Part shown: positions 37,872-61,526 of the stretch, piece by piece
Layout of the letters: each line of letters starts with the position of its first letter
How positions within the stretch are numbered: position 1 is the stretch's first letter
IMG/VR virus record: IMGVR_UViG_3300032331_003609
Span: 124,001-188,000 of that record
Reading direction: 5' to 3' (one strand)
DNA: 64,000 nucleotides
The notes under the pieces: generated by a model
Database searches by the model: none
Seen by the model: the letters and a program-made list of their open reading frames with translations, nothing else
Told to the model about the DNA's origin: nothing
Made by a program: the position numbers and the translations under genes

Positions 37872-39953
37872 ATGAGTCTTAACCCTGAATTCGTTTTGGT
37901 CTTGGAAAAATCTTCACATAACCTGAAGTCCGAGAAGAATGGTAACGAATATTATCTTGAAGGTATAGCAGCAGTGTTTGGTAAAGAGAATTCAAACCAA
38001 AGAATCTACGAGGAAAGAGAATATCTTCCCCATTTGCAATATTTAAAAGAAAAGATAGAACAAAAAAGATTAGTAGGTGAATTAGATCACCCTAAGGAAT
38101 TTGATGTGTCTTTAAAGAATATTTCACACCTAGTTGAAGAGCTTGCTTATGATCAAGAGAATAGAACTTTAAGAATTAAAGTTAGACTTTTAGATACACC
38201 AGCAGGTAAAATAGCTAAATCTTTAGTTGATGCTGGTATTCCAGTTTCTATCTCATCAAGAGCAGCAGGCAACGTGATGGAAAACAAAAAAGTACAAATT
38301 AAGAAGATTTTTACCTATGATCTAGTTGCTGATCCTGGATTTGAGAATGCTCAATTAGAAAGAGTTTACGAAAGCTATGGATACAATCTTAACGAAAAGT
38401 CAAAAAATGAATCCATTTTAAATGGTCTTCCTTTGATGAACGAAAGCTTAGGATTAGAAAATGATTCAAATTTTAAGATATATAGAATCAAAGATCAAGA
38501 TAAGATACAAAAGCTTCTAGATAAGGAGCCAAATAAGAGTTTAATCATGGAAAATAATTTCGTTACAGCGGAAGAAATGAATGGATATTCTAAACTAATC
38601 AAAAAAGAAATGGACACTATTAAAGGGTCTATTGAATCATTGAAAGGGATTAAAGAATCTTCCAAAATAACAGAATCATCTTCTCTTGAGGAAAGAGTTG
38701 GTAAGTTAGAAAAGTATGCTGATTATTTAGCAGAAAACCTAGAGGCATCTATTAAGTATGGTGAATACCTAGCTGAAAATTTAGAAGATTCAGTTTCTTA
38801 TTCTAAGTATCTTGCAGAGAACCTAGACAAATCTATTTCTTATGCAAAATATCTTGCTGAGCATTTAGATCACAATATCTCTTATTCTGAGTACATTGCA
38901 GAGAACGTTGACAACAACGTAACAGCAGTTAAAGGTCTAACAGAGAAAGTTGATCAATCTATTGCTTATGCAGAATATGTAGCAGAGAACGTAGACAAGA
39001 ACATTAAGTATAGCGAATACCTTGCTGAAAACTTAGATAAGAACATCTCTTATTCTGAGTATCTTGCTGAGAACGTAGATAAGAACATTTCTTATTCTGA
39101 GTACTTAGCAGAAAACCTAGATAAAGGTTTAGCTTATAGCGAATACTTAGCTGAGAAATTAGATAAGAACATTTCTTATTCTGAGTACTTAGCAGAAAAC
39201 CTAGATAAAGGTTTAGCTTATTCTGATTATCTTGGTGAGAACCTAGATAAGACAGTTCATTACAGTGAGTATATCGCTGAAAAATTAGCTAACAACATCA
39301 GCTATGCAGAATACATCGCTGAGTCTGTAAATGCAGCTTCAGGAACCGCAGAGGTAAAAGAAGCAGTAACAAAAGCAATTTCTGAAAACACAAGAACTTC
39401 AGGATATGCAGGAGATTACACAGAGATCTCTTCTAAAATTGACAATTTATTGAACACTGTCGGTAAACAAAAGACAGAAGAAATAGCAGAAAATAAGAAC
39501 TATCCTTTCTTAAAGCTTATGGGCGAACAAGGACAAAGAGAATTTTTATCACTGCACGAAGGCCAAAAACAAAAGGTCGCCAAATCCTTAAACGAAAACA
39601 ATTACTCATCCGAAAAAGAGGTAGTTGAAATTATGGGTAAAACTCTGAATGAGCAAAATCAATCCGGAGAAAAATTCCTAGATTTAATGCCAGAAAAATA
39701 CAAAACTACATGGGAGAATATGAATGAGTCTCAAAAGGCCTCTATATTAGCTCAAAGTAAGTTTCATAAATTGGATACTCCTTACCAAATCCAGAATTTC
39801 TGGGCTACAAGAGGTATTGCAGTTACCAAGGCAAATATCGAAAGAATAGACGAATCCCAAGAACAAATAACCGCAGCTCCTCAGCCAAAGGGAATATCTA
39901 GAGAATATTTAGATAATCTTTCTGAAGCTTTAGCTGTTAGGTTTAAAAAATAA
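37872..39953 (+). CDS. gp21: Prohead protease (gp21, U9 family) fused to gp22-like scaffold
   Basis: LEGIA...N.N.RIY, GELDHP, NISH, LDTPAGKIAK.L, ISSRA.G, TYDLVADPGF; then about 500 aa helical scaffold directly before gp23. Confidence 0.93.
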   Translation: MSLNPEFVLVLEKSSHNLKSEKNGNEYYLEGIAAVFGKENSNQRIYEEREYLPHLQYLKEKIEQKRLVGELDHPKEFDVSLKNISHLVEELAYDQENRTLRIKVRLLDTPAGKIAKSLVDAGIPVSISSRAAGNVMENKKVQIKKIFTYDLVADPGFENAQLERVYESYGYNLNEKSKNESILNGLPLMNESLGLENDSNFKIYRIKDQDKIQKLLDKEPNKSLIMENNFVTAEEMNGYSKLIKKEMDTIKGSIESLKGIKESSKITESSSLEERVGKLEKYADYLAENLEASIKYGEYLAENLEDSVSYSKYLAENLDKSISYAKYLAEHLDHNISYSEYIAENVDNNVTAVKGLTEKVDQSIAYAEYVAENVDKNIKYSEYLAENLDKNISYSEYLAENVDKNISYSEYLAENLDKGLAYSEYLAEKLDKNISYSEYLAENLDKGLAYSDYLGENLDKTVHYSEYIAEKLANNISYAEYIAESVNAASGTAEVKEAVTKAISENTRTSGYAGDYTEISSKIDNLLNTVGKQKTEEIAENKNYPFLKLMGEQGQREFLSLHEGQKQKVAKSLNENNYSSEKEVVEIMGKTLNEQNQSGEKFLDLMPEKYKTTWENMNESQKASILAQSKFHKLDTPYQIQNFWATRGIAVTKANIERIDESQEQITAAPQPKGISREYLDNLSEALAVRFKK
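38712..39341 (+). repeat. 15 tandem 42-bp (14-aa) repeats, consensus SYSEYLAENLDKNI
   Basis: Counted in translation from KYADYLAENLEASI to SYAEYIAESVNAAS; unit 6 is degenerate. Confidence 0.92.
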
Positions 39954-46164: not shown

Positions 46165-46196
46165 GAAACTTTAGTACATTTGGGATATAAAATATA
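46165..46196 (+). promoter_or_regulatory. Overlapping ECF-type (GAAACTT-N16-TAAAATATA) and Bacteroidota -7 (TACATTTG, 46175-46182) promoters
   Basis: Both motifs precede the 46203 ATG. Confidence 0.6.
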
Positions 46197-46202
46197 AATT
46201 TT

Positions 46203-46742
46203 ATGTCCCTTTTTGTTATTGAAGGAGCTAGAAAATCTGGTAAAACACATTTTGTTAGTTCCCAAAGTTGGATCCCCGTATTTAAATTTGATTTCAATGG
46301 ATTGTACACATCCTTGGATCTTCCTGCAGAGGGTGAAAAAACTCACCATATTGGACTGGGTAAGGAGCTAATGGTTCAGCAACTAAACAGGGATGGTTTT
46401 CTTTCAGATCTAATGATGGACCGGGGAATTATTACTAATTCAGTCTGGGGTATTCTAAATAAAAGGGTAAGCAAAAAATCTGTTTATAAAGAGCTAGATT
46501 ATATGCTTGAAAACAATCTTTTTAAAGACACCTTCTTTTTTTTAATCACTGGAACATCCCCAGAGAATAGAGAGAAAGATGTTTGGGATTATATGGACAA
46601 GAAGATTCCTGAAGAAAGTGCTCTTTTTATAGAACTTGGAAATTATCTTTCAGAAAGAGGGGTAAAGATTCAGACAATCGAAAATAAATTTGATGCTGAA
46701 TCACTCTCTGCATTCCAAACTATAATTAAAAACCTTAAATAA
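46203..46742 (+). CDS. P-loop (deoxy)nucleoside monophosphate kinase, thymidylate kinase-like
   Basis: VIEGARKSGKT Walker A; MDRG motif. Confidence 0.75.
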   Translation: MSLFVIEGARKSGKTHFVSSQSWIPVFKFDFNGLYTSLDLPAEGEKTHHIGLGKELMVQQLNRDGFLSDLMMDRGIITNSVWGILNKRVSKKSVYKELDYMLENNLFKDTFFFLITGTSPENREKDVWDYMDKKIPEESALFIELGNYLSERGVKIQTIENKFDAESLSAFQTIIKNLK

Positions 46743-46743
46743 T

Positions 46744-48177
46744 ATGTGTGGAATACTAATTGCTCATAATCCCTCCGAGGAAAGAATTAAGTCAATATCG
46801 CACAGGGGTATCGAATATTCCACACACTCAGATGCATCGGGATTAACCCTATGCCATCACAGATTGCCTATCCAAACAGCAATAGGTGACGGTTGGATTC
46901 AACCGGTCGAGATATCGAAAGACAAGTACCTTCTATTCAATGGCGAAATTTTTAATTATCCCACGGAGCTATATGATTCAGATACTGCGTATCTAGCTAG
47001 TCTTTTTTCTACCTGCCTAGACTTTTCATCACTTGAGATGTTTAGTGCTCTCTACGAGCCCCATATTAAGAGCTGGGATGGTTTCTGGGCTATTTGTCTG
47101 GTTGATATGAAGACAAAGAACGTTATTTGTTTTACAGACCCTCTAGGTAAGAAGTGCCTATACTATAATGATCTTGGAGAAATCTGCTCTGAAATGAAAG
47201 GACTTATTAATAGTGCTTCTTTCTTAGATAGATCCTTTATGGGCGGTGTAAGAAAATGGGGGTATGTTCCTAATGAATCTACCCCATTTGAAAACATCCA
47301 GAAGATCCGACCAAACTACTTTTATCAATGGAATTTTGCTGCTCCAGACTTCAAGAAGCTATATGGTCCCTATTTCTCATTTAAACCCCCCAAATTTGAG
47401 TTTAATTCTGAGGATGAGATGTTAGATTGGGTTTGGAACAAAGTTGAAGCAGCGACAAAGAATAGACTGTTAAGCTTGGACTATCCTATATCCATCCTGC
47501 TTTCAGGAGGTCTGGATTCATCTATCATTGGTGGGCTTCTTCTTAAGCTAGGTGCGGATGTTAGTTGGTATACCATAAACAACGGACCGGACAATGATTA
47601 TGTCAGAGAATGCGAGAATTATTGGGGTATTAAAGTAAACCAATTGGAATATACAATGAACGAAGATAGTATTAATCTGGATGAATTGTATTTTAAGTGG
47701 AATGAATCTCCTATAGATTTAGGCAGCGTGGTACCACAGTACCTGCTATTTGATGCGATTAAAAAAGGAACAGACACTAGAATAGTCCTATCAGGGGACG
47801 GAGCAGATGAAATGTTTGGAGGATATAGAAGGATAGATGAGTACGACTCACAAGGATCTGATGTTTTCCATGAATTAACATATTACCATTTACCAAGACT
47901 TGATAAAATGAGCATGGCACACACATTAGAGCTTAGAAATCCTTTTCTGAATTTAGAGCTTCTTCAAATGGCACTAAATCTTCCGATGGATTTAAGGAAA
48001 CATAAGACCATTCTTAAGAAAGCATTCAAAGGATTGGTTCCAGATTCTGTTATAGAAAGAAAAAAGCATCCATTAAAGAATGAAAGAATAGTGAAAGATC
48101 CTATGGAATATAGAATAGAAGCTATTGAAAGCTTTAAAAAGGGATACAGCGATTTTTTAGAAAGAGGAGAATATTAA
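46744..48177 (+). CDS. asnB: Asparagine synthase-like glutamine-dependent amidotransferase (AsnB family)
   Basis: N-terminal MCGI, HRG, H.RL.I, FNGEIFNY, LLSGGLDSS, LSGDGADEMFGGY, LELRNPFL. Confidence 0.93.
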   Translation: MCGILIAHNPSEERIKSISHRGIEYSTHSDASGLTLCHHRLPIQTAIGDGWIQPVEISKDKYLLFNGEIFNYPTELYDSDTAYLASLFSTCLDFSSLEMFSALYEPHIKSWDGFWAICLVDMKTKNVICFTDPLGKKCLYYNDLGEICSEMKGLINSASFLDRSFMGGVRKWGYVPNESTPFENIQKIRPNYFYQWNFAAPDFKKLYGPYFSFKPPKFEFNSEDEMLDWVWNKVEAATKNRLLSLDYPISILLSGGLDSSIIGGLLLKLGADVSWYTINNGPDNDYVRECENYWGIKVNQLEYTMNEDSINLDELYFKWNESPIDLGSVVPQYLLFDAIKKGTDTRIVLSGDGADEMFGGYRRIDEYDSQGSDVFHELTYYHLPRLDKMSMAHTLELRNPFLNLELLQMALNLPMDLRKHKTILKKAFKGLVPDSVIERKKHPLKNERIVKDPMEYRIEAIESFKKGYSDFLERGEY

Positions 48178-49661
48178 TAAAGCTCAATTCCTGCTAGAGA
48201 ATCACCTTTTGCATTAAGTGGTGAATAATCTTCTGGTTCATCCGTCAAAAGAAACGTCTTACTTGCATCGACAACTAAACCAGCTATTCCCATAAATCCC
48301 CTGTTAATTAGTATCGGAGTACTTTTGTTAGTTCTATCAACAATAGAAAATTTAACCTTCTTGTAAACCATTTCCCCGAATTCAATATCTAAAAGAATAA
48401 CTGGCCTTTTATCAGTTTGATCCCCAACTTCTGCATGGGAATATTCCATTATTCTGTTACTAAAGGATTTACCCCCAACTGTCCAATTTAAAAATCCATC
48501 AACCTCTTCTGAAAAATCTGCATGAAGAGAACACGCAATAGATCCGTTGCCAGTATCTAATTTACCTATAAATTTGCCAACCCCCTTGATATCAAAGCTC
48601 TCTCTAAATCCCACCATTTTTCGAGGATAATTCCAGTTCTTTTTATCAAGTATAAAATCTAAGATAATTCCTGTTACGTCAAGACCCGTTGCTTTTTCTA
48701 TGCCGTCAGTTCCTGGTGATGCGTTTACTTCTAAAACATATGGTATACCAGTATTTTTTCCAATAATAATATCAACACCACACCACGAGCATTCAGTTGC
48801 TTTAGCAGCTCCTATTGCTATTTTTTCTATCTCTTTAGATATTTCTACTGCCTCTGCTACCCCACCTAAAGACACGTTTGTTCTAAAGTCATTCTCTATT
48901 CTGTGTCTTTTCATAGAGGCTATAATTGTATAATCATCCCCGTCGCCTGTAGAATTTCTAGATCCAACTACGTGTATTCTTAAATCAAAGTCAGCTTCTA
49001 TTTTTTCTTGGACTATTAATTCAGTTTCTGGCGAAAGCTTCCATATTGTTTGTAAAGTTGAGAAAAGAGACGTTTTAGAATCTATCTGAAATACACCTAT
49101 TCCTTTGGTGCCGCTTAATGTTTTTACTACAATAGGGTATTTTCCCCCGATTTTACTCATAGCATTTTCTATATCATCCTCTGATGATATTAAAGCAGTT
49201 TTTGGTGTCGGTATTCCTTTTTCTTGGAGTTTTTGAACAGTGTCTAACTTATCTTCACAAAGAAGTACAGATCTTGGTGAATTCACTGATACAAATCCAA
49301 GAGATTCAAGTTTTTCAAAAAATTTAACAGCTGCTGTTGAGTTTATTGATGATCTTCTAGCAAGTATTGCTGTATTTTTAATATCAATCTCATACTTGTT
49401 GTTGCTTCCTTTATTTCTAATAAAGAAGCTTCCTGTTTCACTTTTTTCGATTTCCCCCTGCGATGTGTTAATTATGATGCATTTAAATCCTAAAGAAGTG
49501 GATTTCTCCATCATTTTTTTAACAGTTGGAGCAAGATAGTTTTTTCTTGATTCTAATTTGGTTGTAAGAATCACAAGGGAAATAGGCTTTTTTGAGCCTA
49601 TCTTTAGATTCTCAGCTCCCTGAAAAACAAAATCATCTTCTTTGGTCAATAAATTATCCAT
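48174..49661 (-). CDS. rimK: RimK-family ATP-grasp ligase fused to C-terminal retropepsin-like (RimB/ATP-dependent Zn-protease family) domain
   Basis: DKL.T...L...GIP.PKT, P.VVK...G..GIGV, DLR..V.G, FR.NVS.GG, GVDII, LEVN.SPG; then KLDTGNG...SLHA...RPVI.LD..F...FSIVDR...ILINR.FM. Confidence 0.9.
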   Translation of the reverse strand: MDNLLTKEDDFVFQGAENLKIGSKKPISLVILTTKLESRKNYLAPTVKKMMEKSTSLGFKCIIINTSQGEIEKSETGSFFIRNKGSNNKYEIDIKNTAILARRSSINSTAAVKFFEKLESLGFVSVNSPRSVLLCEDKLDTVQKLQEKGIPTPKTALISSEDDIENAMSKIGGKYPIVVKTLSGTKGIGVFQIDSKTSLFSTLQTIWKLSPETELIVQEKIEADFDLRIHVVGSRNSTGDGDDYTIIASMKRHRIENDFRTNVSLGGVAEAVEISKEIEKIAIGAAKATECSWCGVDIIIGKNTGIPYVLEVNASPGTDGIEKATGLDVTGIILDFILDKKNWNYPRKMVGFRESFDIKGVGKFIGKLDTGNGSIACSLHADFSEEVDGFLNWTVGGKSFSNRIMEYSHAEVGDQTDKRPVILLDIEFGEMVYKKVKFSIVDRTNKSTPILINRGFMGIAGLVVDASKTFLLTDEPEDYSPLNAKGDSLAGIELY

Positions 49662-49696: not shown

Positions 49697-49726
49697 AAAA
49701 AAGGAGATCTTTGAGGATCTCCTTTT
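49697..49726 (-). terminator. Intrinsic terminator between the Glu-rich gene and rimK
   Basis: AAAAGGAGATC-6 nt-GATCTCCTTTT perfect inverted repeat with T-run on the minus strand. Confidence 0.8.
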
Positions 49727-53489: not shown

Positions 53490-54620
53490 ATGTTATCAGG
53501 AAAAATAAGTAAGATACGAAAAATTTGGAATCCTATTAAGGATTTTATTAAACCCGAATTGGATATAAATGATACCCCGAAGAATCCGGGTGTTACCGGC
53601 AATACATCAAACGTTACTGTTAAACATAAGATCATCAGCTATTATGCTGATTATGAAGAAAGAAAATATTATAAGGGATTTGCCAAAGCACTTATAGAGA
53701 GGTGCAAAGGATTTGGCTTGGACTATGATATTGCAGAAATTGAATCCAGAGGAAACTATGGAGATAATTGTCTAATGAAGCCTGAGTTTATCCTTGAAAA
53801 ATTAAAGCAGTATAAAAAACCTCTAATATGGATGGATTGCGACACCGACTTTAGAGAGCCGTTTGATCATTTCAATGAGGTTACAGAGGATATAGGAATG
53901 GCAACTCATAGCGGGAATATTGAGGGAATCAAAGCATCCCCCTTATATTTAAATTACACTAAAGGTGCTTTTAGAATAATAAGAGAGTGGGTGATTCATT
54001 GTAGAGAATGTTATGATAATGGTATAGTCGAATTAGATCATGACGCATTAAAGCACTACGTACTAGATACAATTAAAGGATCATATTCGATATACATACT
54101 AAATAAAAATTGGAACGACTTTGTACATGGGCGTTATATTTGGAATGGGAACTCAAAAGTCGAAGGCAAGGTACAGACCCATAGACAGGTAGGTGTTACA
54201 GATGATGTAAGAAGATCCTACTCACAAAATGCTAAGACATTTAAAATTATATTCAAATCGGAGACACCAGAGGATTTTAAATCTGGGTTGATCTTCTTAG
54301 ATCAATTTTCAGATAGATCCAGAATTAATTTTATTTTTAAAAAGAAGCTTTTAGCCGAATCTATAGATAATGATGATTTTGCTAGACTTAAAATAGAATC
54401 TGGCGGATTGATATACTTTGATCCCTCCGTTCTTGATTCTATTGAACCAGGAAAATCCGATATTATTATAGAAGCTACAAACGTCACAAGCATAGAGCAA
54501 GATTGGGATCTTAAAATTATATCGAGTATAGACACGGAACAAAATCCACTTGATGATTTATTTTTTGATTCAAAAGAAGGGGGAGTTAGAATAAAAACAT
54601 ATAAAAAACTATGGAGCTAA
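53490..54620 (+). CDS. GT-A glycosyltransferase (paralog of 52843..53430) with degenerate C-terminal domain
   Basis: NCLMKPEFIL..L, WMDCD, ASPLY, DHDAL. Confidence 0.75.
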   Translation: MLSGKISKIRKIWNPIKDFIKPELDINDTPKNPGVTGNTSNVTVKHKIISYYADYEERKYYKGFAKALIERCKGFGLDYDIAEIESRGNYGDNCLMKPEFILEKLKQYKKPLIWMDCDTDFREPFDHFNEVTEDIGMATHSGNIEGIKASPLYLNYTKGAFRIIREWVIHCRECYDNGIVELDHDALKHYVLDTIKGSYSIYILNKNWNDFVHGRYIWNGNSKVEGKVQTHRQVGVTDDVRRSYSQNAKTFKIIFKSETPEDFKSGLIFLDQFSDRSRINFIFKKKLLAESIDNDDFARLKIESGGLIYFDPSVLDSIEPGKSDIIIEATNVTSIEQDWDLKIISSIDTEQNPLDDLFFDSKEGGVRIKTYKKLWS

Positions 54621-55471
54621 TAAAAGGCATAGGAATGCCATTTCCTGAGAATTATTCTTCATGCTCTAATCTGCCGCCAAAAGAATTTTGCTGGACTAGT
54701 AAGGAGGGTATAGCAGATATCTATATTGATGATAAAATAATGGACGGGTTACAAACTCCTAAGAGTAATTCTAAATTTGGATGGCTTTGTGAATCTAGAG
54801 AGATCGCTATAGATATTTTTAATACTATATTACAAAATCCTAAAAAATTCAAAGAAAAATATGCAGGTATTTTTACGTGTGATGAGACTTTATTAGGGTG
54901 TGATTCTTTATTCATATATGCACCACCAGGATCTAATCTTCCGTGGACCAAGCCTGAAGAAATATCAATTTATGAAAAAAGTAAACTATGCTCTATGTTA
55001 TGCTCGCCTAAGGCAAGAACAGAAGGGCATAAACTCAGACTAGAAGTAGCAAAGACCCTAATGAATAGATTGGATTTATTCGGAGGTGCCCATGGATCCC
55101 CTAGAATAGGTGAGGGATTTGGACCAAAGCAGGATTGGTGGAGATCTAAATTACCAGCTTTAAAAGATTACATGTTTTCAATTGTTTTCGAAAATGCTGT
55201 TTATGACAAGTATTACACTGAAAAAATAACAGACTGTTTTGCAACAGGGACAATTCCAGTTTATTGGGGAACTAAAAAAGTGGTAGAGGATTTTAATTCT
55301 GATGGAATTATATTTTATGATGAACTGGGTTCAATAGAAGATCTAAATGAAGAATTATATCTTTCTAAATCAGATTCAATCAAAGATAATTTAGAAAGAG
55401 TCAGATCATTAAAGTCTGGAGATGATTGTGTTTATTCTGCTATAAAAACAATTCAAAATGCAGAAAAATAA
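54611..55471 (+). CDS. GT10-like (fucosyltransferase-type) glycosyltransferase
   Basis: K...LKDYMFSIVFEN....YYTEKITDCF.TGTIPVYWG. Confidence 0.82.
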   Translation: MELIKGIGMPFPENYSSCSNLPPKEFCWTSKEGIADIYIDDKIMDGLQTPKSNSKFGWLCESREIAIDIFNTILQNPKKFKEKYAGIFTCDETLLGCDSLFIYAPPGSNLPWTKPEEISIYEKSKLCSMLCSPKARTEGHKLRLEVAKTLMNRLDLFGGAHGSPRIGEGFGPKQDWWRSKLPALKDYMFSIVFENAVYDKYYTEKITDCFATGTIPVYWGTKKVVEDFNSDGIIFYDELGSIEDLNEELYLSKSDSIKDNLERVRSLKSGDDCVYSAIKTIQNAEK

Positions 55472-56096
55472 AACTATCTTAGTAACCCAATTTTACATTC
55501 CCGATGACGTTAAAAGATATCAGGAATTAAAGTATTGTGTGAAAGAGAATATTTCCAATACACTAATAGATCAAATTGTTTTGGTTGTTGAAAGGGGAAC
55601 TTCTGATAGACTGATCCCATTCCACGAGAAAATAAAAATTAATTGGATAGAAAATAGGCCAACATACCAAGATCTTTTTAAGATAGCAAAAAAAACACTC
55701 GGAAACAAAAAAGGATTAATGGTAATATCTAATAGTGATATTTTTTATGATGAAGATTGTATTTCTAAAATGTATGAAAAAATTTCCAATCAAGAACCCC
55801 TAGCCCTTTCAAGATGGGAATTCAAAATAGGAAGCAACCCGGTTCATCATGATACTTGGGACAGTCAAGATACGTGGGTGTTTAAGGATTATATTCTTCC
55901 TGGAAAATATGCTATAAATTTAGGAATACCTGGATGTGATAACAAAATAGCTTACGAGCTTCAAAAGGCTGGATATATGGTTAAGAATCCATCTAAGTCT
56001 ATAAAATCCTATCATTATCACACATCAGAGCATAGAACATATAATGAAGAAGATAGAATTTCTGGACCTTATCTTTTTATAAACACTGAAGAATGA
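55458..56096 (+). CDS. Putative GT-A-like glycosyltransferase
   Basis: R.QEL..C...N, RPTY, ISNSDI, LSRWE, SQDTW.F, G.PGCDN.IA. Confidence 0.65.
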   Translation: MQKNKTILVTQFYIPDDVKRYQELKYCVKENISNTLIDQIVLVVERGTSDRLIPFHEKIKINWIENRPTYQDLFKIAKKTLGNKKGLMVISNSDIFYDEDCISKMYEKISNQEPLALSRWEFKIGSNPVHHDTWDSQDTWVFKDYILPGKYAINLGIPGCDNKIAYELQKAGYMVKNPSKSIKSYHYHTSEHRTYNEEDRISGPYLFINTEE

Positions 56097-56743
56097 GTAA
56101 AATAGATTTAAAAAAAATAACTGCGGTTTGTATAGACGGAAGACCCTATGATAAAGAAAGGTATGAGAGGTATAGTGTTATTCTTAATTTCTTTCTAACA
56201 AACGCGGAATTTACATCTATACAAATGATATCCACACACGATCCAGAAATAGAAGGTGTTTCTCATACAAGAATAAAAGAATTTGGAATATCTGATTATT
56301 CAAGATTCTGCTTGCATCATTTATCAGATTGGGTTAATTCTGAGTTTTGCCTTATTTTTCAGGATGATGGATTTATACTCAACCCTAGTTTATGGAACGA
56401 TTCTTTTTATGAGTATGATTATATAGGATCTCCTTGGCCTCTTTATATAGGTTGGCCGGTAGAGGGACAACAAGTAGGAAATGGTGGATTTTCACTCAGA
56501 AGTAAAAGGCTTTTAGAATTTACTAAAACATTTACCGGGCACACCACTGAGAATGAAGACACCTATATAATTTCTGCTAAAAGAAAAGATATAGAAGATG
56601 AAGGATTAAAAATTGCTCCTTTAGAAATTGCTCGACTTTTTTCGATTGAGAATAGTTTAGACCCCGAGCATCGTTTAGATACATGCTTTGGATTTCACGC
56701 CAAGCATTTATTAGATGATGCAATAAAAATGATACAACAATGA
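56093..56743 (+). CDS. Putative glycosyltransferase (DUF5672-like)
   Basis: LIFQDDGF, YDYIGSPW, VGNGGFSLRSK, ED, FS.E, FGFH. Confidence 0.75.
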   Translation: MSKIDLKKITAVCIDGRPYDKERYERYSVILNFFLTNAEFTSIQMISTHDPEIEGVSHTRIKEFGISDYSRFCLHHLSDWVNSEFCLIFQDDGFILNPSLWNDSFYEYDYIGSPWPLYIGWPVEGQQVGNGGFSLRSKRLLEFTKTFTGHTTENEDTYIISAKRKDIEDEGLKIAPLEIARLFSIENSLDPEHRLDTCFGFHAKHLLDDAIKMIQQ

Positions 56744-57468
56744 AAGTAATGGCATATTATCCAGTTCACTATGGAGCTGAGTATTTTAATGCATCTATTA
56801 AATCAATAGATGAACAGGTTGAGAAAATCCTAATTCTTTATACGCCTAAACCTAGTTATGGCCACGGAACAGAAAAGCAATGCCCGGAAACAGAAGATGA
56901 ATTAAAAGAGATAGCATTTGGATCTTCCAACAAAATAGAATGGGTGACAGTAGATGCTGGTAATGAAGGAAATCACCGGGCATTAGCATTTACCAATGCA
57001 TCTGAATATGATATCATGCTAACTCTAGATACCGATGAGGTTTGGGAGTCTACTTCTTTAGAAAGATGTATTCAAGAAGCATATGACGGAGAAGCATGGA
57101 GAAGAAATATTTCCGGATTTATTCATTTTTGGAAATCTTTCAATTGGGCATGTCAAGATGGTTTTGAGCCTGCTAGAATTTTTAATCTAAAAAGAAAAAA
57201 TAATTTAGAGGTTCCAATTAACGGTACAATCTATCATTTTGGGTATGCTCAATCTAAAAAAATAATGGATTACAAGTTTGATATTCACGGACACAAGAAT
57301 GAACTTAAAGAAGGATGGTTAGAAAATACATACTATGGATGGGAACCTGGAAAACTAGATCTTCATCCAACATGTGGGGTTTGGCCAGAAGCTAAACTGT
57401 TTGATAAAAACACACTCCCTGATATTTTAAAATCACATCCAAATTTTGATAAAGAAATAATTTCATGA
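56740..57468 (+). CDS. GT2-like glycosyltransferase
   Basis: LTLDTDEVW DxD motif; IYHFGY. Confidence 0.75.
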   Translation: MKVMAYYPVHYGAEYFNASIKSIDEQVEKILILYTPKPSYGHGTEKQCPETEDELKEIAFGSSNKIEWVTVDAGNEGNHRALAFTNASEYDIMLTLDTDEVWESTSLERCIQEAYDGEAWRRNISGFIHFWKSFNWACQDGFEPARIFNLKRKNNLEVPINGTIYHFGYAQSKKIMDYKFDIHGHKNELKEGWLENTYYGWEPGKLDLHPTCGVWPEAKLFDKNTLPDILKSHPNFDKEIIS

Positions 57469-58400
57469 GAAAAAAGCTTTTATACATTCCTTTAGATTAT
57501 TGTAGACATGCTGAGAGTGATTCAATATTTAACTCCATGTTATCTGGATTTAATACCCAATTTGAAGCTCGTGTTTTTAAAAATATGGAGGAATCTATTT
57601 TATTTAATCCGGACCTTGTTTATATGCACGGTAATGCCATTTCGATTGAAGAATGTCATTTGCTTAAAAAATCAACTAATGCTTTTTTTACCATATGGGT
57701 AGGTGACGTTAGATATGCACCTTTACCCGAGGCAATGAGCATGATTGATGTTGCAAATCTCTATTTATTTCCATTTAAAGGAGAACAATTAAAATCTTTT
57801 TCCCGAATCCTTAATACACCTTGTGAATATCTTTTTGAGGTATTTGATGATAGGCAGATTAGAGATGTAAAGGAGATATCTTCTGGAAGAATAGTATTTG
57901 TTGGCAATGTTTATGAGCATTTTCCAGGGGGTGAAGAAAGAATATCTCTCGTAAAATTTATTGGGAAACATGCTCCTGAATTAGAGTATTATGGATCATT
58001 CCCATATGAGAGTAATTCAGCAAAAGGGGGAATAGATTTCTCAAATGTTCCAGACTTATATAATTCATCATATTTAACTATTGCACATAATAATAGAAAT
58101 GATATAGATGGGTATTTTACTCACCGTAACTTAATAGCGCTAGCATCAGGCTCATGTGTATTGATGAAATATTTTCCTGGTATAGAGGAATTCTTTATTA
58201 ATTGGGAGCATTGCGTTTATTATAAAACAAATTATGAATTATTGGATGTAATTGAATTTTTAAAAAGAAACCCAGACATAAGAAATAAAATTGCTAAAAG
58301 CGGAAATACATATGTTAGGGAAAATTATCTAAATGCTAATTTTGCCTATAAGTATAATGAAATTTTAAATAAAATAAAAAAGCTAAATCATGAAAGATAA
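57465..58400 (+). CDS. GT-B glycosyltransferase (CgeB/DUF3880-like)
   Basis: W.GD.R, IVFVGN, ER, R....LASG, G.EE.F....H.VYY, IAK.G..YV. Confidence 0.78.
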   Translation: MRKKLLYIPLDYCRHAESDSIFNSMLSGFNTQFEARVFKNMEESILFNPDLVYMHGNAISIEECHLLKKSTNAFFTIWVGDVRYAPLPEAMSMIDVANLYLFPFKGEQLKSFSRILNTPCEYLFEVFDDRQIRDVKEISSGRIVFVGNVYEHFPGGEERISLVKFIGKHAPELEYYGSFPYESNSAKGGIDFSNVPDLYNSSYLTIAHNNRNDIDGYFTHRNLIALASGSCVLMKYFPGIEEFFINWEHCVYYKTNYELLDVIEFLKRNPDIRNKIAKSGNTYVRENYLNANFAYKYNEILNKIKKLNHER

Positions 58401-58917
58401 AATAAAAAAATATTCTCTCCATTGGGCTTTAGGTGGAAATGATGCGAACGGAGGACTGGAACAAAATGCTTATGAACTTGAAAAGCTTTGTGAATTTATA
58501 AAGGAAAAAAATATTAAAACCTACACAGAGATAGGGTGTGCTGCTGGACAGCTCCTAAGATTTATGAGGGATGAATTTGAACTTGATACAACGGGAATTA
58601 CTTTAGAACCAAGGGATACTCATAAAGATCTACCCATAATACACGGAAGTTCCAGAGATCCTGAAATAATAAAAACTGCAAAGCCGTGTGATCTTTATTT
58701 CATAGACGGAGATCATTCTTATTTAGGAGTTAAATCTGATTATTTGAATTATAAAGGTCTTTGTAAATACATGGCATTTCACGACATATTAGGGCAAAGA
58801 GACTGTGAAGGGGTTTCCCAATTTTGGAATGAAATAAGAAATGAATATGAATTTATAGAATTTATAGATCCTAATAGGGATATAGCTAGTGGAATCGGAA
58901 TTATTAAAATAATATAA
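58390..58917 (+). CDS. Class I SAM-dependent methyltransferase (Methyltransf_24-like)
   Basis: EIGC..G, FIDGDHSY.GVK.D, AFHDI, V..FW. Confidence 0.82.
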   Translation: MKDKIKKYSLHWALGGNDANGGLEQNAYELEKLCEFIKEKNIKTYTEIGCAAGQLLRFMRDEFELDTTGITLEPRDTHKDLPIIHGSSRDPEIIKTAKPCDLYFIDGDHSYLGVKSDYLNYKGLCKYMAFHDILGQRDCEGVSQFWNEIRNEYEFIEFIDPNRDIASGIGIIKII

Positions 58918-58919
58918 AA

Positions 58920-59954
58920 ATGGAAACTGTAATTATAACCGGATCCTGTGGATTAATTGGAAGTGAAGCTGTTAAATTCTTTCATACACAAGGATTTAAA
59001 ATAATTGGAATTGATGATGATTCTCGAGCTAAATTTTTTGGAAAAGAAGCAAGTACAAATGGGATGCTTTCTCAATTAAAAGAACTTAAAAATTACCAGC
59101 ATCTTTCAATTAATATTTCATCTTATCAAGATCTACAGACTAGTTTATCCAGCATTAAAGATTTAAAGATGATTATTCATACAGCTGCTCAACCTTCTCA
59201 TGATTGGGCAGCAACAAATCCGTTTGCAGATTTTAATGCAAATGCACTTGGTACCTTAAACATGCTAGAAATAACAAGAAATTATTTTCCAGAGGTAGTT
59301 TTTATCTTTACTTCTACTAATAAAGTTTATGGAGATTTACCTAATACTATAACAGAATACACAGAATCTAATTCTAGATTTAATCCGGTTAATTCTGATT
59401 TTATAGAAAAAGGAATTAACGAAAACCTATCAATAGATCAATGTAAGCATTCTTTATTTGGTGTATCAAAAGCTTACGGGGATTTAATAACACAGGAATA
59501 TGGAAAATACTTTGGATTAAAAACTGGCACATTCAGAGGTGGATGCTTAACTGGACAAAATCATTCAGGTGTTAAGGCTCATGGATTTTTATCTTATCTA
59601 GTAAAATGTGCAATGACAGGAGAAAAATATTACATTAATGGATACAAAGGAAAACAAGTTAGAGATAACATACACTCTAGTGATGTTGTCTCCGCCTTTT
59701 ATGAATTTTATAAAAATCCTAATCCCGGTGAAGTCTATAATATAGGAGGAGGAAATCTTTCAAACTGCTCAATTCTAGAAGCTATTGAATTAATTCATGA
59801 AATATCAGGTAAAAGAGTAGACTATGAATTACTTGAAACACCAAGAGAAGGCGACCATATTTGGTATATTAGTGATATGACAAAATTTAGAAATGATTAT
59901 CCAAATTGGATTCAAAAATATGACCTAAGAAAAATAATAAAAGAAATGATATGA
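58920..59954 (+). CDS. NAD-dependent sugar epimerase, CDP-paratose 2-epimerase (RfbE)-like
   Basis: ITGSCGLIG, HTAAQPSH, STNKVYGD, S.FGVSK, FR.GC.TG, GKQVRD..H. Confidence 0.88.
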   Translation: METVIITGSCGLIGSEAVKFFHTQGFKIIGIDDDSRAKFFGKEASTNGMLSQLKELKNYQHLSINISSYQDLQTSLSSIKDLKMIIHTAAQPSHDWAATNPFADFNANALGTLNMLEITRNYFPEVVFIFTSTNKVYGDLPNTITEYTESNSRFNPVNSDFIEKGINENLSIDQCKHSLFGVSKAYGDLITQEYGKYFGLKTGTFRGGCLTGQNHSGVKAHGFLSYLVKCAMTGEKYYINGYKGKQVRDNIHSSDVVSAFYEFYKNPNPGEVYNIGGGNLSNCSILEAIELIHEISGKRVDYELLETPREGDHIWYISDMTKFRNDYPNWIQKYDLRKIIKEMI

Positions 59955-60580
59955 TTAGTATAGTTTTTCCCCACGCTATGAACAAAGAGAATGATGCGGT
60001 TCTCCAATTGAAATTAAAAATGTTAGAAGAGAATTCCACTTACCCCTATGAGGTTATGGTTTTATCCAACACAGGAAGACCTGATTTAGTTTATGAATCA
60101 TGGGATTGGATGATGAGAAGAGCTAAATATGACCTGGTTCTATGGGATAATTCAGATATAACATATGCTCCAAAATTCATGGATAATATTATCAAACACA
60201 AAGATGATGCAGATTGGTTAGGACTCGAATTAATTGAATGTGGAGCCATAGGAGTGGCTGCAACCAACATCCATCAAGATTTTGGAAGAACAGCAAATTC
60301 TTTCAATAGATCAGAATTTGAAAAATGGGTGGAAGAATATTCTAAAGATCGCCCATCAATAAGAGAAGGATTTTGCTGGTACTCTCCTTCAGTTTGGAAG
60401 AAAGAATGGTACATTAAAATAGGTGGTTTTAACTTCTCAAAGCCATTTCCTCACCCGAATGATTCTGAGTTTAGAGAGAAGTGTATAGCAGCAGGATCAA
60501 CATTTGCTGTTGTTAATTCTTTTGCATATCATTTTCAAAGAGCAGGAGAAAATAGGGGAGAAAAACCAGAAAGAGAATAA
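59951..60580 (+). CDS. GT2-like glycosyltransferase
   Basis: ISIVFP, LWDNSD, GGF...P....DSEF, YHF. Confidence 0.65.
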   Translation: MISIVFPHAMNKENDAVLQLKLKMLEENSTYPYEVMVLSNTGRPDLVYESWDWMMRRAKYDLVLWDNSDITYAPKFMDNIIKHKDDADWLGLELIECGAIGVAATNIHQDFGRTANSFNRSEFEKWVEEYSKDRPSIREGFCWYSPSVWKKEWYIKIGGFNFSKPFPHPNDSEFREKCIAAGSTFAVVNSFAYHFQRAGENRGEKPERE

Positions 60581-60590
60581 TCAATGATAT

Positions 60591-61526
60591 ATGAAAAAAA
60601 ATATTGCAATATTTGGATCAACAGGATTAGTTGGTTCTAACATTCTTAAAAAAATAGACACCGAAAAATATAAGGTTTATGCTCCTTCGAGAAAGGAGCT
60701 AGATCTTTTCGATCAGGAAAAGGTCCTAGATTGGTTCTTTGAAAATAAAATGGAATATGTAATCATTGCAGCTGCTAGGGTTGGAGGAATAGTTGCTAAT
60801 TCAACATACCCTACAGAATTCTTGCATGAGAATCTCACAATCCAAAATAATATTATAATGTCTGCTTTAAAGAGCGATGTCAAAAATCTTATATTTCTAG
60901 GATCTTCTTGCATTTATCCGAGAGAATGCCCACAACCAATTAAGGAAGAATATCTACTAACTGGTCCTTTAGAGAAGACAAATAAATCCTATGCCTTGGC
61001 AAAGATTGCTGGTATTCAATTATGTGATTCGATCAAAGAACAATACGGAAATAATTACTATTCTTTAATGCCGTGTAATCTTTATGGTCCGGGTGATAAT
61101 TTTGATCTAGAAGCTTCCCATGTTATTCCGGGAATGATTAGAAAAATTGAAAGCGCTAGAGACAACAATCAACCAACGCTTAAACTACTCGGAACAGGAA
61201 GACCCCTTAGAGAATTTCTTTATGTGGAAGATCTAGCAGAAGCTGTAATATTCATGTTAGAAAACTATAACGGAAAAGATGGTTTAATTAACGTTGGAAG
61301 CGGTTCTGAAATCACGATAAAAGATCTAGCAAATATAATTTCACGTGTCATAGGATATAAAGGTGAAATTCTTTTTGATACTGAGGGATTAGACGGAACA
61401 CCCAGAAAGGTAATGGACAATTCTAAAATAGAATCGCTTGGATGGAAACCCCAAATGACATTAGAAACAGGAATAACCGAAACAGTAAAATGGTATTGGG
61501 ACAATAAGGATAAAATTAGAAAATGA
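60591..61526 (+). CDS. fcl: GDP-L-fucose synthase
   Basis: G..GLVGS, AAARVGGI.AN, LGSSCIYP, YALAK, MPCNLYGP.DNF, SHVIPG, REFL.VEDLA, DG.PRK. Confidence 0.96.
   Translation: MKKNIAIFGSTGLVGSNILKKIDTEKYKVYAPSRKELDLFDQEKVLDWFFENKMEYVIIAAARVGGIVANSTYPTEFLHENLTIQNNIIMSALKSDVKNLIFLGSSCIYPRECPQPIKEEYLLTGPLEKTNKSYALAKIAGIQLCDSIKEQYGNNYYSLMPCNLYGPGDNFDLEASHVIPGMIRKIESARDNNQPTLKLLGTGRPLREFLYVEDLAEAVIFMLENYNGKDGLINVGSGSEITIKDLANIISRVIGYKGEILFDTEGLDGTPRKVMDNSKIESLGWKPQMTLETGITETVKWYWDNKDKIRK

What the first reader, a model, noticed from the sequence alone, without database searches (positions are those of the whole stretch)
46165..48177. Early/middle two-gene operon: NMP kinase plus AsnB-family amidotransferase
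The genes abut (1-nt gap) behind host-type and ECF-type promoters, which suggests nucleotide metabolism. An amidotransferase coupled to a divergent dNMP kinase is the layout expected for making and phosphorylating a modified nucleotide. Alternatives from known AsnB homologs are peptidoglycan amidation (LtsA/AsnB) or sugar amidation (WbpS-type) feeding the nearby glycan island.
Basis: inference. Interest (0 to 1): 0.6.

Follow-up and report, generated by a model that had tools for sequence, protein, structure and literature searches.

The report
Phage nucleotide kinase–amidotransferase gene cassette
A freshwater jumbo phage carries a tightly coupled pair of genes, a thymidylate-kinase-like nucleotide kinase and an asparagine-synthetase-like amidotransferase, which in related viruses sits among DNA-precursor and DNA-modification genes, so it probably builds an unusual DNA base by a step not yet described.

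Summary
The two ORFs are real: 46203-46742 (179 aa) and 46744-48177 (477 aa), 1 nt apart, both under strong purifying selection.

Gene A has no Pfam hit. It folds as a thymidylate/deoxynucleoside kinase (Z 15.6) and keeps the P-loop and DR motif. Its family profile matches yeast TMK, SPbeta YorR and the RB69 ORF045 'nucleotide kinase' of the 5-hydroxycytosine cluster.

Gene B is a complete AsnB-family enzyme (Cys2, NGE, SGGLDS, catalytic Lys). It scores below every equivalog cut-off and shows at most 28% identity to the cellular AsnB genes found.

In 80 of 80 IMG/VR loci holding the amidotransferase, the kinase lies directly upstream. In three more distant lineages the amidotransferase sits beside a dCMP-type thymidylate-synthase homolog, among RNR, dUTPase, dCMP deaminase, DNA methyltransferases and PolB. 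That homolog is also in this genome and in 5 of 5 complete relatives.

The amidated substrate is unknown, and a plain asparagine synthetase is not excluded.

The early/middle timing and the host-type/ECF promoter calls could not be verified; there is only a conserved promoter-like box. The convergent RimK-like ligase is clade-specific. The fucose-type glycan island gives no support for sugar amidation.

The parts
46165..46191 (+). Promoter-like element: GAAACTTT box (46165-46172) followed by GGGATATAAA with a -10-like TATAAA (46186-46191), 12 nt before the start codon
   Evidence: Read from the sequence. The same arrangement, GAAAyTTT...GGGrTATAAt, is conserved upstream of the kinase gene in relatives. 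It does not reach the sigma-70 consensus threshold. The strict pattern occurs 5 times in the genome against about 2.4 expected. Function not shown.
46182..46209 (+). 12-bp AT-rich hairpin (GGGATATAAAAT / ATAA / ATTTTATGTCCC) followed by TTTTTG; its 3' arm contains the ATG of gene A
   Evidence: Terminator-like hit. Relatives L001 and L003 also have a hairpin between the upstream 680-800 aa gene and the kinase gene. Its role (terminator of the upstream structural gene and/or translational control) is not shown.
46203..46742 (+). Gene A: 179-aa P-loop nucleotide kinase of the thymidylate-kinase/deoxynucleoside-kinase superfamily (phage-restricted subfamily; P0001)
   Evidence: Invariant residues: EGxRxSGKT P-loop, D73-R74-G75, K125-D126. 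AlphaFold model pLDDT 92.4. Vaccinia TMK Z 15.6, dGK 14.2, NadR RNK 14.1; Foldseek TMK E 2e-5. The 105-sequence family profile hits yeast TMK 4e-5, SPbeta YorR 2e-4 and dNK 3e-3. hhalign to RB69 ORF045 gives 96.9% probability, E 1.5e-10.
46744..48177 (+). Gene B: 477-aa class-II glutamine amidotransferase with a PP-loop adenylating domain, AsnB family (P0002)
   Evidence: Pfam GATase_7 and Asn_synthase. TIGR01536 scores 218 bits, below the 267 cut-off. Human ASNS 1e-23, E. coli AsnB 7e-19. Invariant residues: C2, N66-G67-E68, D80, S254-GGLDS, SGDGADE 350-356, H382, R385, K441.
48174..49661 (-). Convergent neighbour: 495-aa RimK-family alpha-L-glutamate ligase (ATP-grasp) with a C-terminal retropepsin-like (RimB/RloA-like) domain. 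Its stop overlaps the stop of gene B by 4 nt
   Evidence: Pfam RimK 4e-38. TIGR00768 scores 169.6, above the 143.4 cut-off, and the C-terminus matches RloA3-like at 5e-8. It is next to the pair in only 20 of 80 loci. In 5 of 5 complete relatives it lies elsewhere, 4-8 kb from the TS-like gene.

Best explanation
Genes A and B form a conserved, probably translationally coupled cassette of freshwater T4-like jumbo phages. The cassette belongs to the phage's pathway for a non-canonical (C5-modified cytosine-type) DNA precursor.

Proposed mechanism:
1. A thymidylate-synthase homolog with Asp at ThyA position 177 is encoded elsewhere in this genome (G000 103166-103945). It modifies dCMP at C5.
2. 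Gene A is a TMK/YorR-like kinase of the same family as RB69 ORF045. It phosphorylates a non-canonical nucleotide.
3. Gene B releases ammonia from glutamine at Cys2. It uses ATP at its PP-loop to adenylate an acceptor group, then amidates it.
4. The acceptor is on, or destined for, that nucleotide or DNA modification. It is most likely a carboxylate next to a positively charged amino group, because the acidic pocket D352/D355/E356 is kept.

Shown: the ORFs, the folds, the catalytic residues, the strict linkage of A and B, and the repeated neighbourhood with TS-like and nucleotide/DNA-modification genes.

Inferred: that A acts on a modified dNMP, that B acts in the same pathway, and what B amidates.
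For: - Linkage. The kinase lies directly upstream of the amidotransferase in 80 of 80 IMG/VR loci at 50-96% AsnB identity and in 30 of 30 loci found through the kinase. The genes are 1-3 nt apart or overlap by 4 nt.
- The pair persists outside the head-gene synteny. In L041-L043 the order is UvdE, gp32, UvsX, exonuclease, DnaB, RNR, KINASE, AsnB, TS-like, dUTPase, PolB.
- In L146 (AsnB 42% identical) the operon is dUTPase, KINASE, unknown, N-MTase-like, C5 DNA MTase, AsnB, TS-like, dCMP-deaminase-like.
- In L147 (AsnB 35% identical) the TS-like gene is directly followed by AsnB.
- Distant kinase relatives that lack AsnB also sit by TS and dCMP deaminase genes.
- The TS-like gene is in this genome. 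It is 50% identical to the L041 copy and present in 5 of 5 complete relatives. It keeps the catalytic Cys and D169, and has Asp at position 177. That Asp is the dCMP-specificity determinant (PMC8670742, PMC13326640).
- The kinase family matches RB69 ORF045, a component of the proven 5hoC cluster (PMC13326640).
- No canonical TMK is found in this record or in 5 complete relatives.
- The AsnB clade shows at most 28% identity to the cellular genes the pattern scan found and fails the asparagine-synthase equivalog cut-offs.
- Uncharacterised amidotransferases near phage base-modification kinases have been noted before (PMC8989533).
Against: - No chemistry is shown. There is no known nucleotide substrate for any AsnB-family enzyme.
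- The acidic pocket that binds the alpha-amino group of aspartate in human ASNS is largely retained (D355, E356, and D352 for E364; PMC6748925). This fits free aspartate as well.
- In the window's own clade the pair sits after head genes, not in the nucleotide-metabolism region.
- The TS-like gene was missed in 2 of 5 fragmentary relatives.
- GATase_7 was not enriched in one cytosine-modification virome study (the file was truncated, and the habitats differ).
- The complex prediction gave no verdict.
- RB69 uses a T4 gp1-type kinase for 5hodCMP, so the role of the ORF045-type kinase is itself unproven (PMC13326640).
Confidence: 0.5

Rival explanations
1. Two independent auxiliary genes that merely share a transcript: a dNMP/dTMP kinase that boosts dNTP supply, and a genuine glutamine-dependent asparagine synthetase that supplies Asn for an Asn-rich, AT-rich phage proteome.
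For: The full AsnB catalytic set is present and the alpha-amino-binding acidic residues are kept (PMC6748925). The best family model is asn_synth_AEB. Asn makes up 6.3% of predicted phage proteins. The phage lacks another TMK.
Against: The enzyme scores below the equivalog cut-offs: 218 against 267, and 146 against 499. The invariant changes E364->D and D400->His affect residues conserved in asparagine synthetases (PMC6748925). Identity to the cellular AsnB genes found is at most 28%, unlike a recently captured host gene. Adjacency to the kinase in 80 of 80 loci, and repeated adjacency to TS-like and DNA-modification genes in different gene orders, are hard to explain by co-expression alone.
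Confidence: 0.27
2. A peptide or small-molecule amide pathway with the neighbouring RimK-like ligase, analogous to NAGGN synthesis (ATP-grasp ligase plus AsnO amidotransferase) or to RimK/RimB tailing of ribosomal protein S6. The ligase adds glutamate, gene B amidates it, and the kinase is a bystander.
For: The RimK-family ligase passes its NCBIfam cut-off and carries a RimB-like domain. It overlaps the 3' end of gene B and is kept there in 20 loci. P0002 and P0210 give weak hits to the NAGGN trio models TIGR03104 and TIGR03103. The acidic pocket suits an amino-acid moiety.
Against: RimK is absent from the neighbourhood in 60 of 80 loci and in L041, L146 and L147, while the kinase is always there. 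TIGR03104 scores 117 against a 570 cut-off. In complete relatives RimK lies in the replication/nucleotide region, near the TS-like gene. That placement could equally tie it to the nucleotide pathway.
Confidence: 0.08
3. NAD+ salvage or reconstitution: gene A is a nicotinate/nicotinamide riboside kinase (NadR-RNK-like) and gene B amidates NaMN or NaAD, countering NAD-depleting defences.
For: The NadR RNK domain is among the top structural matches (Z 14.1). 32 of 105 family members give weak AAA_28 hits. PP-loop amidation of nicotinate nucleotides is known chemistry, though in a different family (my own knowledge).
Against: Sequence profiles favour TMK, YorR and dNK. The neighbourhoods hold TS-like, dUTPase, dCMP deaminase, RNR and DNA MTase genes, not NAD genes. 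No NadE-type features are present.
Confidence: 0.05
4. Cell-envelope amidation: gene B amidates peptidoglycan precursors (LtsA/AsnB1-like) or uronic-acid sugars (WbpS-like) feeding the nearby glycan island.
For: AsnB homologs do such reactions (my own knowledge). A glycosyltransferase-rich island lies 5 kb downstream.
Against: The island encodes GDP-mannose 4,6-dehydratase, epimerases/reductases, GT10 fucosyltransferase-like and GT1-like proteins. No recognisable uronic-acid-forming enzyme was found. The island is not next to the pair in L041, L146 or L147. No specific family model is matched.
Confidence: 0.03

Closest known systems
Pre-replicative cytosine-modification clusters of Straboviridae and Pootjesviridae (RB69 gp45-gp55, DLP3 gp76-gp82, RL38J1): TS homolog plus YorR/TMK-like 'nucleotide kinase' plus glycosyltransferases (Lee et al., NAR 2026, PMC13326640)
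   Same: The kinase is of the same family: hhalign to RB69 ORF045 gives 96.9% probability and shares the DRGxxSNxVxG motif. The TS homolog's best solved relative is CMP hydroxymethylase MilA, and it has Asp at ThyA position 177. Glycosyltransferases are plentiful in the genome.
   Different: The TS homolog keeps D169, so it lacks the D169N signature of 5hodCMP synthases. An AsnB-type amidotransferase is welded to the kinase, and no such gene occurs in those clusters. tblastn of P0002 finds only one 21%-identical hit in 50,697 deposited phage genomes. In this clade the TS gene is about 67 kb away from the pair.
T4 dCMP hydroxymethylase (gp42) plus dNMP kinase (gp1) route to 5hmdCTP
   Same: The logic is the same: a TS homolog specific for dCMP, followed by a phage kinase that accepts the modified monophosphate.
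   Different: The kinase here is TMK/YorR-like, not gp1-like (gp1 homology was not tested). There is an extra amidotransferase step of unknown chemistry.
Asparagine synthetase B / human ASNS (PDB 1ct9, 6gq3)
   Same: The two-domain architecture is the same. Shared features are the N-terminal Cys nucleophile, the R/NGE/D glutamine site, the SGGxDS PP-loop, the catalytic Lys, and the D367/E368 equivalents.
   Different: Identity is about 25%, and the protein is about 80 residues shorter. It scores below the equivalog cut-offs. E364 is Asp and D400 is His throughout the viral clade. The genomic context is nucleotide and DNA modification.
Thymidine-hypermodification pathways with the 5-hmdU DNA kinase 5-HMUDK (M6, ViI, PhiW-14, SP10; PMC8989533)
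   Same: A P-loop kinase is linked to base modification. The authors also saw uncharacterised amidoligase/amidotransferase genes nearby.
   Different: The kinase family profile finds nothing in the M6, ViI or PhiW-14 genomes at E<=1. No aGPT-Pplase-type partner gene was noted in the neighbourhoods that I annotated by Pfam, and I ran no dedicated search for one. The TS homolog here is cytosine-type.
NAGGN pathway (Ngg ATP-grasp/GNAT ligase plus AsnO amidotransferase) and the RimK/RimB system
   Same: An ATP-grasp alpha-L-glutamate ligase lies next to an AsnB-type amidotransferase, and the ligase has a retropepsin-like domain.
   Different: The trio models are far below their cut-offs. The ligase is not a constant partner.

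Membership tests
Thymidylate kinase / deoxynucleoside kinase superfamily (P-loop NMP-kinase fold) | Walker A P-loop (GxxxxGK[ST]) preceded by the TMK/dNK-type 'EG' | tested here: met
   E7-G8-A-R10-K-S-G13-K14-T15; E7, G8, R10, G13 and K14 are invariant in 29 homologs, and G8, G13 and K14 are invariant in 105.
Thymidylate kinase / deoxynucleoside kinase superfamily (P-loop NMP-kinase fold) | DR(Y/H/x) motif after strand 3, whose Arg binds the acceptor phosphate | tested here: met
   D73-R74-G75 is invariant. It aligns with the yeast TMK sequence DRYVYSGVAY in the profile hit.
Thymidylate kinase / deoxynucleoside kinase superfamily (P-loop NMP-kinase fold) | Overall fold similarity over the whole domain | tested here: met
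   Vaccinia TMK Z 15.6 (166 aligned residues, rmsd 2.8), S. aureus TMK 14.5, human dGK 14.2. Foldseek TMK E 2.4e-5, TM 0.65.
Thymidylate kinase / deoxynucleoside kinase superfamily (P-loop NMP-kinase fold) | Pfam PF02223 / PF01712 score above the gathering threshold | tested here: not met
   P0001 has no hit. Only 9 of 105 family members give weak TMK hits and 4 of 105 give dNK hits. The family profile against PDB gives yeast TMK 4e-5.
Thymidylate kinase / deoxynucleoside kinase superfamily (P-loop NMP-kinase fold) | Kinase activity and acceptor specificity | not testable with these tools
   Needs an enzyme assay.
RB69 ORF045 / DLP3 gp78-type phage 'nucleotide kinase' | Profile-level homology | tested here: met
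   hhalign 96.9% probability, E 1.5e-10, over the N-terminal 83 residues only. The HMM hits RB69 ORF045 at 4.5e-8.
5-hmdU DNA kinase (5-HMUDK) | Sequence homology to M6 gp54, ViI gp67 or PhiW-14 gp37 | tested here: not met
   The A2 profile finds no match at E<=1 in the M6, ViI and PhiW-14 genomes.
AsnB-family class-II glutamine amidotransferase / PP-loop synthetase | N-terminal Cys nucleophile and the glutamine-binding residues (E. coli R49, N74-G75-E76, D98) | tested here: met
   M1-C2-G3, R40, N66-G67-E68 and D80 are invariant in 23 homologs. R40 is missing in the most distant lineage, L147.
AsnB-family class-II glutamine amidotransferase / PP-loop synthetase | SGGxDS PP-loop and the catalytic Lys (E. 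coli K449 / human K466) | tested here: met
   S254-GGLDS-259 and K441 are invariant. Pfam Asn_synthase scores 135.8 bits against a cut-off of 21.
Asparagine synthetase (glutamine-hydrolysing), equivalog level | Score above the curated cut-offs of TIGR01536 / NF006949 | tested here: not met
   218.3 against 267.1, and 146.5 against 499.
Asparagine synthetase (glutamine-hydrolysing), equivalog level | Aspartate-site acidic cluster (human E364, D367, E368, D400) and R403 | tested here: inconclusive
   D355, E356 and R385 are kept. E364 is replaced by D352 and D400 by H382, invariantly (residue roles from PMC6748925).
NAGGN amidotransferase AsnO (TIGR03104), PEP-CTERM amidotransferase (TIGR03108), lasso-peptide cyclase (NF033535) | Score above the curated cut-off | tested here: not met
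   117 against 570, 133 against 817, and 41 against 525.
RimK family alpha-L-glutamate ligase (the neighbour, 48174-49661) | Score above the TIGR00768 cut-off; ATP-grasp domain | tested here: met
   169.6 against 143.4. Pfam RimK 4e-38.

The most novel reading that the evidence does not exclude
The AsnB-like enzyme carries out a nucleobase or nucleotide amidation or amination that has no precedent. One possibility is converting a carboxyl-bearing substituent on a C5-modified cytosine nucleotide into a carboxamide. Another is PP-loop adenylation and amination of a pyrimidine carbonyl. Either way, these widespread freshwater jumbo phages would carry a new hypermodified base, made by a TS homolog, a TMK-like kinase, an amidotransferase and possibly a RimK-type glutamate ligase.
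Probability: 0.3. Interest if true: 0.85.

Novelty: new variant of a known kind. Interest (0 to 1): 0.66.

Why it matters
Phage DNA hypermodifications defeat restriction and CRISPR defences. They have also supplied enzymes for biotechnology and epigenetic sequencing.

All known pyrimidine pathways use TS homologs, kinases, glycosyl- or amino-acid transferases, PLP or radical-SAM enzymes. An ATP- and glutamine-dependent AsnB-type step has not been described.

The cassette is common in environmental viruses. 247 IMG/VR stretches encode a relative of the amidotransferase, and freshwater metagenomes from several studies hold near-identical sequence. Yet among 50,697 deposited phage genomes tblastn found only one 21%-identical hit. 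A defined three- or four-gene set can now be expressed and tested directly.

If gene B is instead a plain asparagine synthetase, the result is still useful. It would be a deeply diverged viral AsnB, permanently fused in an operon with the phage's only TMK-like kinase.

Tried and rejected
- DNA and tblastn searches of P0001 against 50,697 phage records found nothing. P0002 found one 21%-identical hit.
- The profile of close kinase homologs (A1) against PDB sequences found nothing. Only the wider A2 profile reached TMK.
- The complex prediction for kinase plus amidotransferase scored 0.00, no verdict. It is no evidence either way.
- A search for kinase fusions among the longer family members found no recognisable second domain.
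- Two exact-product look-ups failed because my ORF ends were wrong.
- Pfam scans of the genes downstream of the pair in RimK-less relatives gave only a NUDIX and two DUF hits.
- The MetaGPA supplementary table shows GATase_7 not enriched in cytosine-modified sewage/coastal contigs. The file was truncated and Asn_synthase was not found in it.
- No RNA run holds the locus, so read laying was not used and expression timing was not tested.
- 5-HMUDK membership was rejected.
- Sugar amidation for the glycan island was rejected for lack of a recognisable uronic-acid enzyme.
- No alternative genetic code was needed, and no contig looked human.
Full report
**Setting.** The window is bases 124001-188000 of a 244,850-bp IMG/VR virus record, estimated 86% complete. 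It encodes a gp23-type major capsid protein and a T4-type prohead protease just upstream of the finding. GC content is about 34%. Near-identical sequence occurs in freshwater metagenomes from several independent studies; no RNA run holds it. This is an uncultured freshwater T4-like jumbo phage.

**Observation.**
- ORF A is 46203-46742 (179 aa). ORF B is 46744-48177 (477 aa). One base separates them.
- Both genes are real. There are 87 full-length homologs of A and thousands of B, most on phage-sized contigs.
- dN/dS against a 95%-identical relative is 0.034 for A and 0.026 for B.
- The 59-nt spacer holds a GAAACTTT box (46165-46172) and GGGATATAAA (46182-46191). Relatives conserve this as GAAAyTTT...GGGrTATAAt, so a dedicated promoter is plausible. 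Its class and timing are unknown.
- A hairpin with a T-run (46182-46209) includes the start codon. Relatives also have a hairpin at this junction.
- A different motif, (G/A)ATATATA(A/G), lies 11-40 nt upstream of about 45 genes, including structural genes and the RimK-like neighbour. It is not found in exact form before gene A.

**Gene A.**
- It has no Pfam, PHROG or NCBIfam assignment.
- An alignment of 29 homologs shows an invariant EGxRxSGK[TS] P-loop, DRG, and K125-D126-x-W128.
- The AlphaFold model (pLDDT 92.4) matches thymidylate kinases best: vaccinia TMK Z 15.6 and Foldseek E 2e-5. Next come deoxynucleoside kinases and the NadR ribosylnicotinamide-kinase domain.
- An exhaustive profile search of 1.84 billion representatives finds only 195 clusters, nearly all 160-210 aa.
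- A 105-member profile reaches yeast TMK (4e-5, aligned through the P-loop and the DR motif), SPbeta YorR (2e-4) and dNK (3e-3).
- The same profile matches RB69 ORF045 (hhalign 96.9% probability, E 1.5e-10; HMM 4.5e-8). It finds nothing in the 5-HMUDK-bearing phages M6, ViI and PhiW-14.
- RB69 ORF045 is the YorR/TMK-like 'nucleotide kinase' listed in the RB69 5-hydroxycytosine/arabinose cluster next to its TS homolog (PMC13326640).
- Distant family members sit in nucleotide neighbourhoods. One is DNA methylase, kinase, unknown, TS, dCMP deaminase. Another is dCMP deaminase ... kinase ... nucleoside deoxyribosyltransferase-like, thioredoxin, TS.
- No canonical TMK is detectable in this record or in five complete relatives.

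**Gene B.**
- Pfam gives GATase_7 plus Asn_synthase.
- The best curated model is TIGR01536, at 218 bits against a cut-off of 267. AsnB, AsnO, PEP-CTERM and lasso-cyclase models are far below their cut-offs.
- The closest solved relatives are human ASNS (1e-23) and E. coli AsnB (7e-19).
- The glutaminase residues (C2, R40, N66-G67-E68, D80), the PP-loop (SGGLDS 254-259) and the catalytic Lys (K441) are invariant.
- The phage clade keeps D355 and E356. It has Asp at the E364 position and His at the D400 position, invariantly, down to 36% identity.
- So the chemistry (Gln hydrolysis, adenylation, amidation) is intact and the acceptor probably carries an amino group. The site is not that of a standard asparagine synthetase.
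- In 185,579 species genomes, the only hits at 35% identity or more are short MAG contigs with phage-like content. The genuine cellular genes that the pattern-limited scan found are at most 28% identical.

**Linkage.**
- Searching IMG/VR with the kinase gave 30 loci, all with the amidotransferase immediately downstream.
- Searching with the amidotransferase gave 247 stretches. In the best 80 (50-96% identity) a kinase-family ORF ends at the start of the amidotransferase in 80 of 80.
- Most loci share the head-gene synteny, so by themselves they are weak evidence. The decisive cases are the exceptions:
  - L041-L043 place the pair, overlapping by 4 nt, between a ribonucleotide reductase and a TS-like gene, dUTPase and PolB. 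UvdE, gp32, UvsX, an exonuclease and DnaB lie upstream.
  - L146 (AsnB 42% identical) reads dUTPase, kinase, unknown, N-methyltransferase-like, C5 DNA methyltransferase, AsnB, TS-like, dCMP-deaminase-like. This is the L010 module with methyltransferases and AsnB inserted.
  - L147 (AsnB 35% identical) has the TS-like gene directly followed by AsnB.
- The amidotransferase is therefore found beside a TS homolog in three lineages with different gene orders. It lies beside the kinase everywhere except L147 (no kinase found in the 6.5-kb contig) and L146 (kinase 2.7 kb upstream in the same operon).

**The TS-like partner.**
- This genome encodes it at G000 103166-103945, outside the window, followed by an NT5C-type 5'-nucleotidase.
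- It is 50% identical to the L041 copy and 30% identical to the L010 TS.
- It is present in 5 of 5 complete (92-100%) relatives carrying the pair and in 3 of 5 fragments.
- Its best solved relative is CMP 5-hydroxymethylase MilA.
- It keeps the catalytic Cys, R166, S167 and D169, and has Asp at ThyA position 177.
- Asp177 switches TS enzymes from dUMP to dCMP (PMC8670742; PMC13326640).
- D169N marks 5-hydroxy-dCMP synthases. That change is seen in RB69 ORF048 in my alignment but not here.
- The phage therefore very probably makes a C5-substituted dCMP, but not 5hoC.

**The RimK-like neighbour.**
- The convergent gene 48174-49661 passes the RimK-family cut-off and has a retropepsin-like C-terminal domain.
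- It accompanies the pair in only 20 of 80 loci.
- In five complete relatives a 43-45% identical copy lies elsewhere, 4-8 kb from the TS-like gene inside a replication/nucleotide block. These genomes form one clade, so this counts as one observation.
- It may belong to the same pathway, which would be a glutamate-ligation step, or it may be an independent host-takeover gene. I leave this open.

**Interpretation.** The best reading is a nucleotide-modification cassette. The TS homolog makes a modified dCMP, the TMK-like kinase handles a non-canonical nucleotide, and the AsnB-type enzyme adds an amide nitrogen somewhere in that pathway.
- Shown: the folds, the catalytic residues and the gene linkage.
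- Inferred: the substrates.
- The main rival is a true, deeply diverged asparagine synthetase that merely rides with the kinase. The retained acidic pocket and the Asn-rich proteome (6.3%) keep it alive.
- The NAGGN/RimK-type, NAD-salvage and envelope-amidation readings are less likely, for the reasons given under the rivals.
- The glycan island is GDP-fucose-type: GDP-mannose 4,6-dehydratase, two epimerase/reductases, GT10-like and GT1-like proteins. It offers no carboxylate for amidation.

**Comparison and novelty.** The cassette works like the TS-homolog-plus-kinase front end of known phage cytosine modification (T4, RB69, DLP3). Its kinase is a member of the RB69 ORF045 family. The fixed coupling to an AsnB-type amidotransferase is not described. 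Among 50,697 deposited phage genomes tblastn found only one 21%-identical hit. Lee et al. only remarked on unexplained amidotransferases near thymidine-modification genes (PMC8989533). I class it as a new variant of a known kind.

**Limits.**
- The pattern-seeded locus searches are biased toward conserved motifs.
- Several relatives are fragments.
- The complex prediction gave no verdict.
- No experiment or read-level evidence bears on DNA modification or on transcription.

Noticed in passing
G000 genome-wide; in the window e.g. upstream of 37872 (prohead protease), 41829, 43780, 49661(-), 50331(-), 53490: A motif (G/A)ATATATA(A/G) lies 11-40 nt upstream of about 45 start codons. 31 of 48 genomic ATATATAA copies are within 70 nt of a gene start. 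The genes include structural genes. It looks like the phage's own promoter motif, possibly late and analogous to T4 TATAAATA.
   Followed up: partly
window 53490-62530 (+): A glycan island encodes GDP-mannose 4,6-dehydratase (61523-62530), two NAD-dependent epimerase/reductases, a GT10 fucosyltransferase-like protein, a GT1-like protein and DUF5672. This is a GDP-fucose-type pathway. It could glycosylate DNA, the virion or the host envelope.
   Followed up: partly
G000:C1:103166-105160 (outside the window; locus L006): A divergent dCMP-type thymidylate-synthase homolog (259 aa; Pfam 21 bits, below cut-off; best PDB match MilA) is followed by a zinc-ribbon ORF and an NT5C-type 5'-deoxynucleotidase.
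   Followed up: yes
G007:C1:396502-398403 (locus L141): In a complete 430-kb relative the TS-like gene is one 637-aa open frame. The homology is split into residues 1-182 and 176-258, suggesting an intein or another in-frame insertion.
   Followed up: no
L003 / L004 11552-12736 (-): An IS605-family OrfB/TnpB (Cas12f-like) gene is inserted right after the RimK-like gene in two relatives.
   Followed up: no
window 37872-39953 (+): The prohead protease is unusually long (693 aa). The S77/S80 protease domain is at the N-terminus, and a long C-terminal extension gives weak PSCyt2-like and coiled-coil-type hits.
   Followed up: no
L143-L147 (genome contigs): Contigs carrying the phage cassette are binned into MAGs labelled Fluviibacter, Saprospirales and Candidatus Fonsibacter lacus. 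They are probably mis-binned viral contigs, or hints to hosts.
   Followed up: no
window 49699-49726: A bidirectional terminator-like hairpin (12 bp, T-runs on both sides) lies between the RimK-like gene's upstream region and the next minus-strand gene.
   Followed up: no
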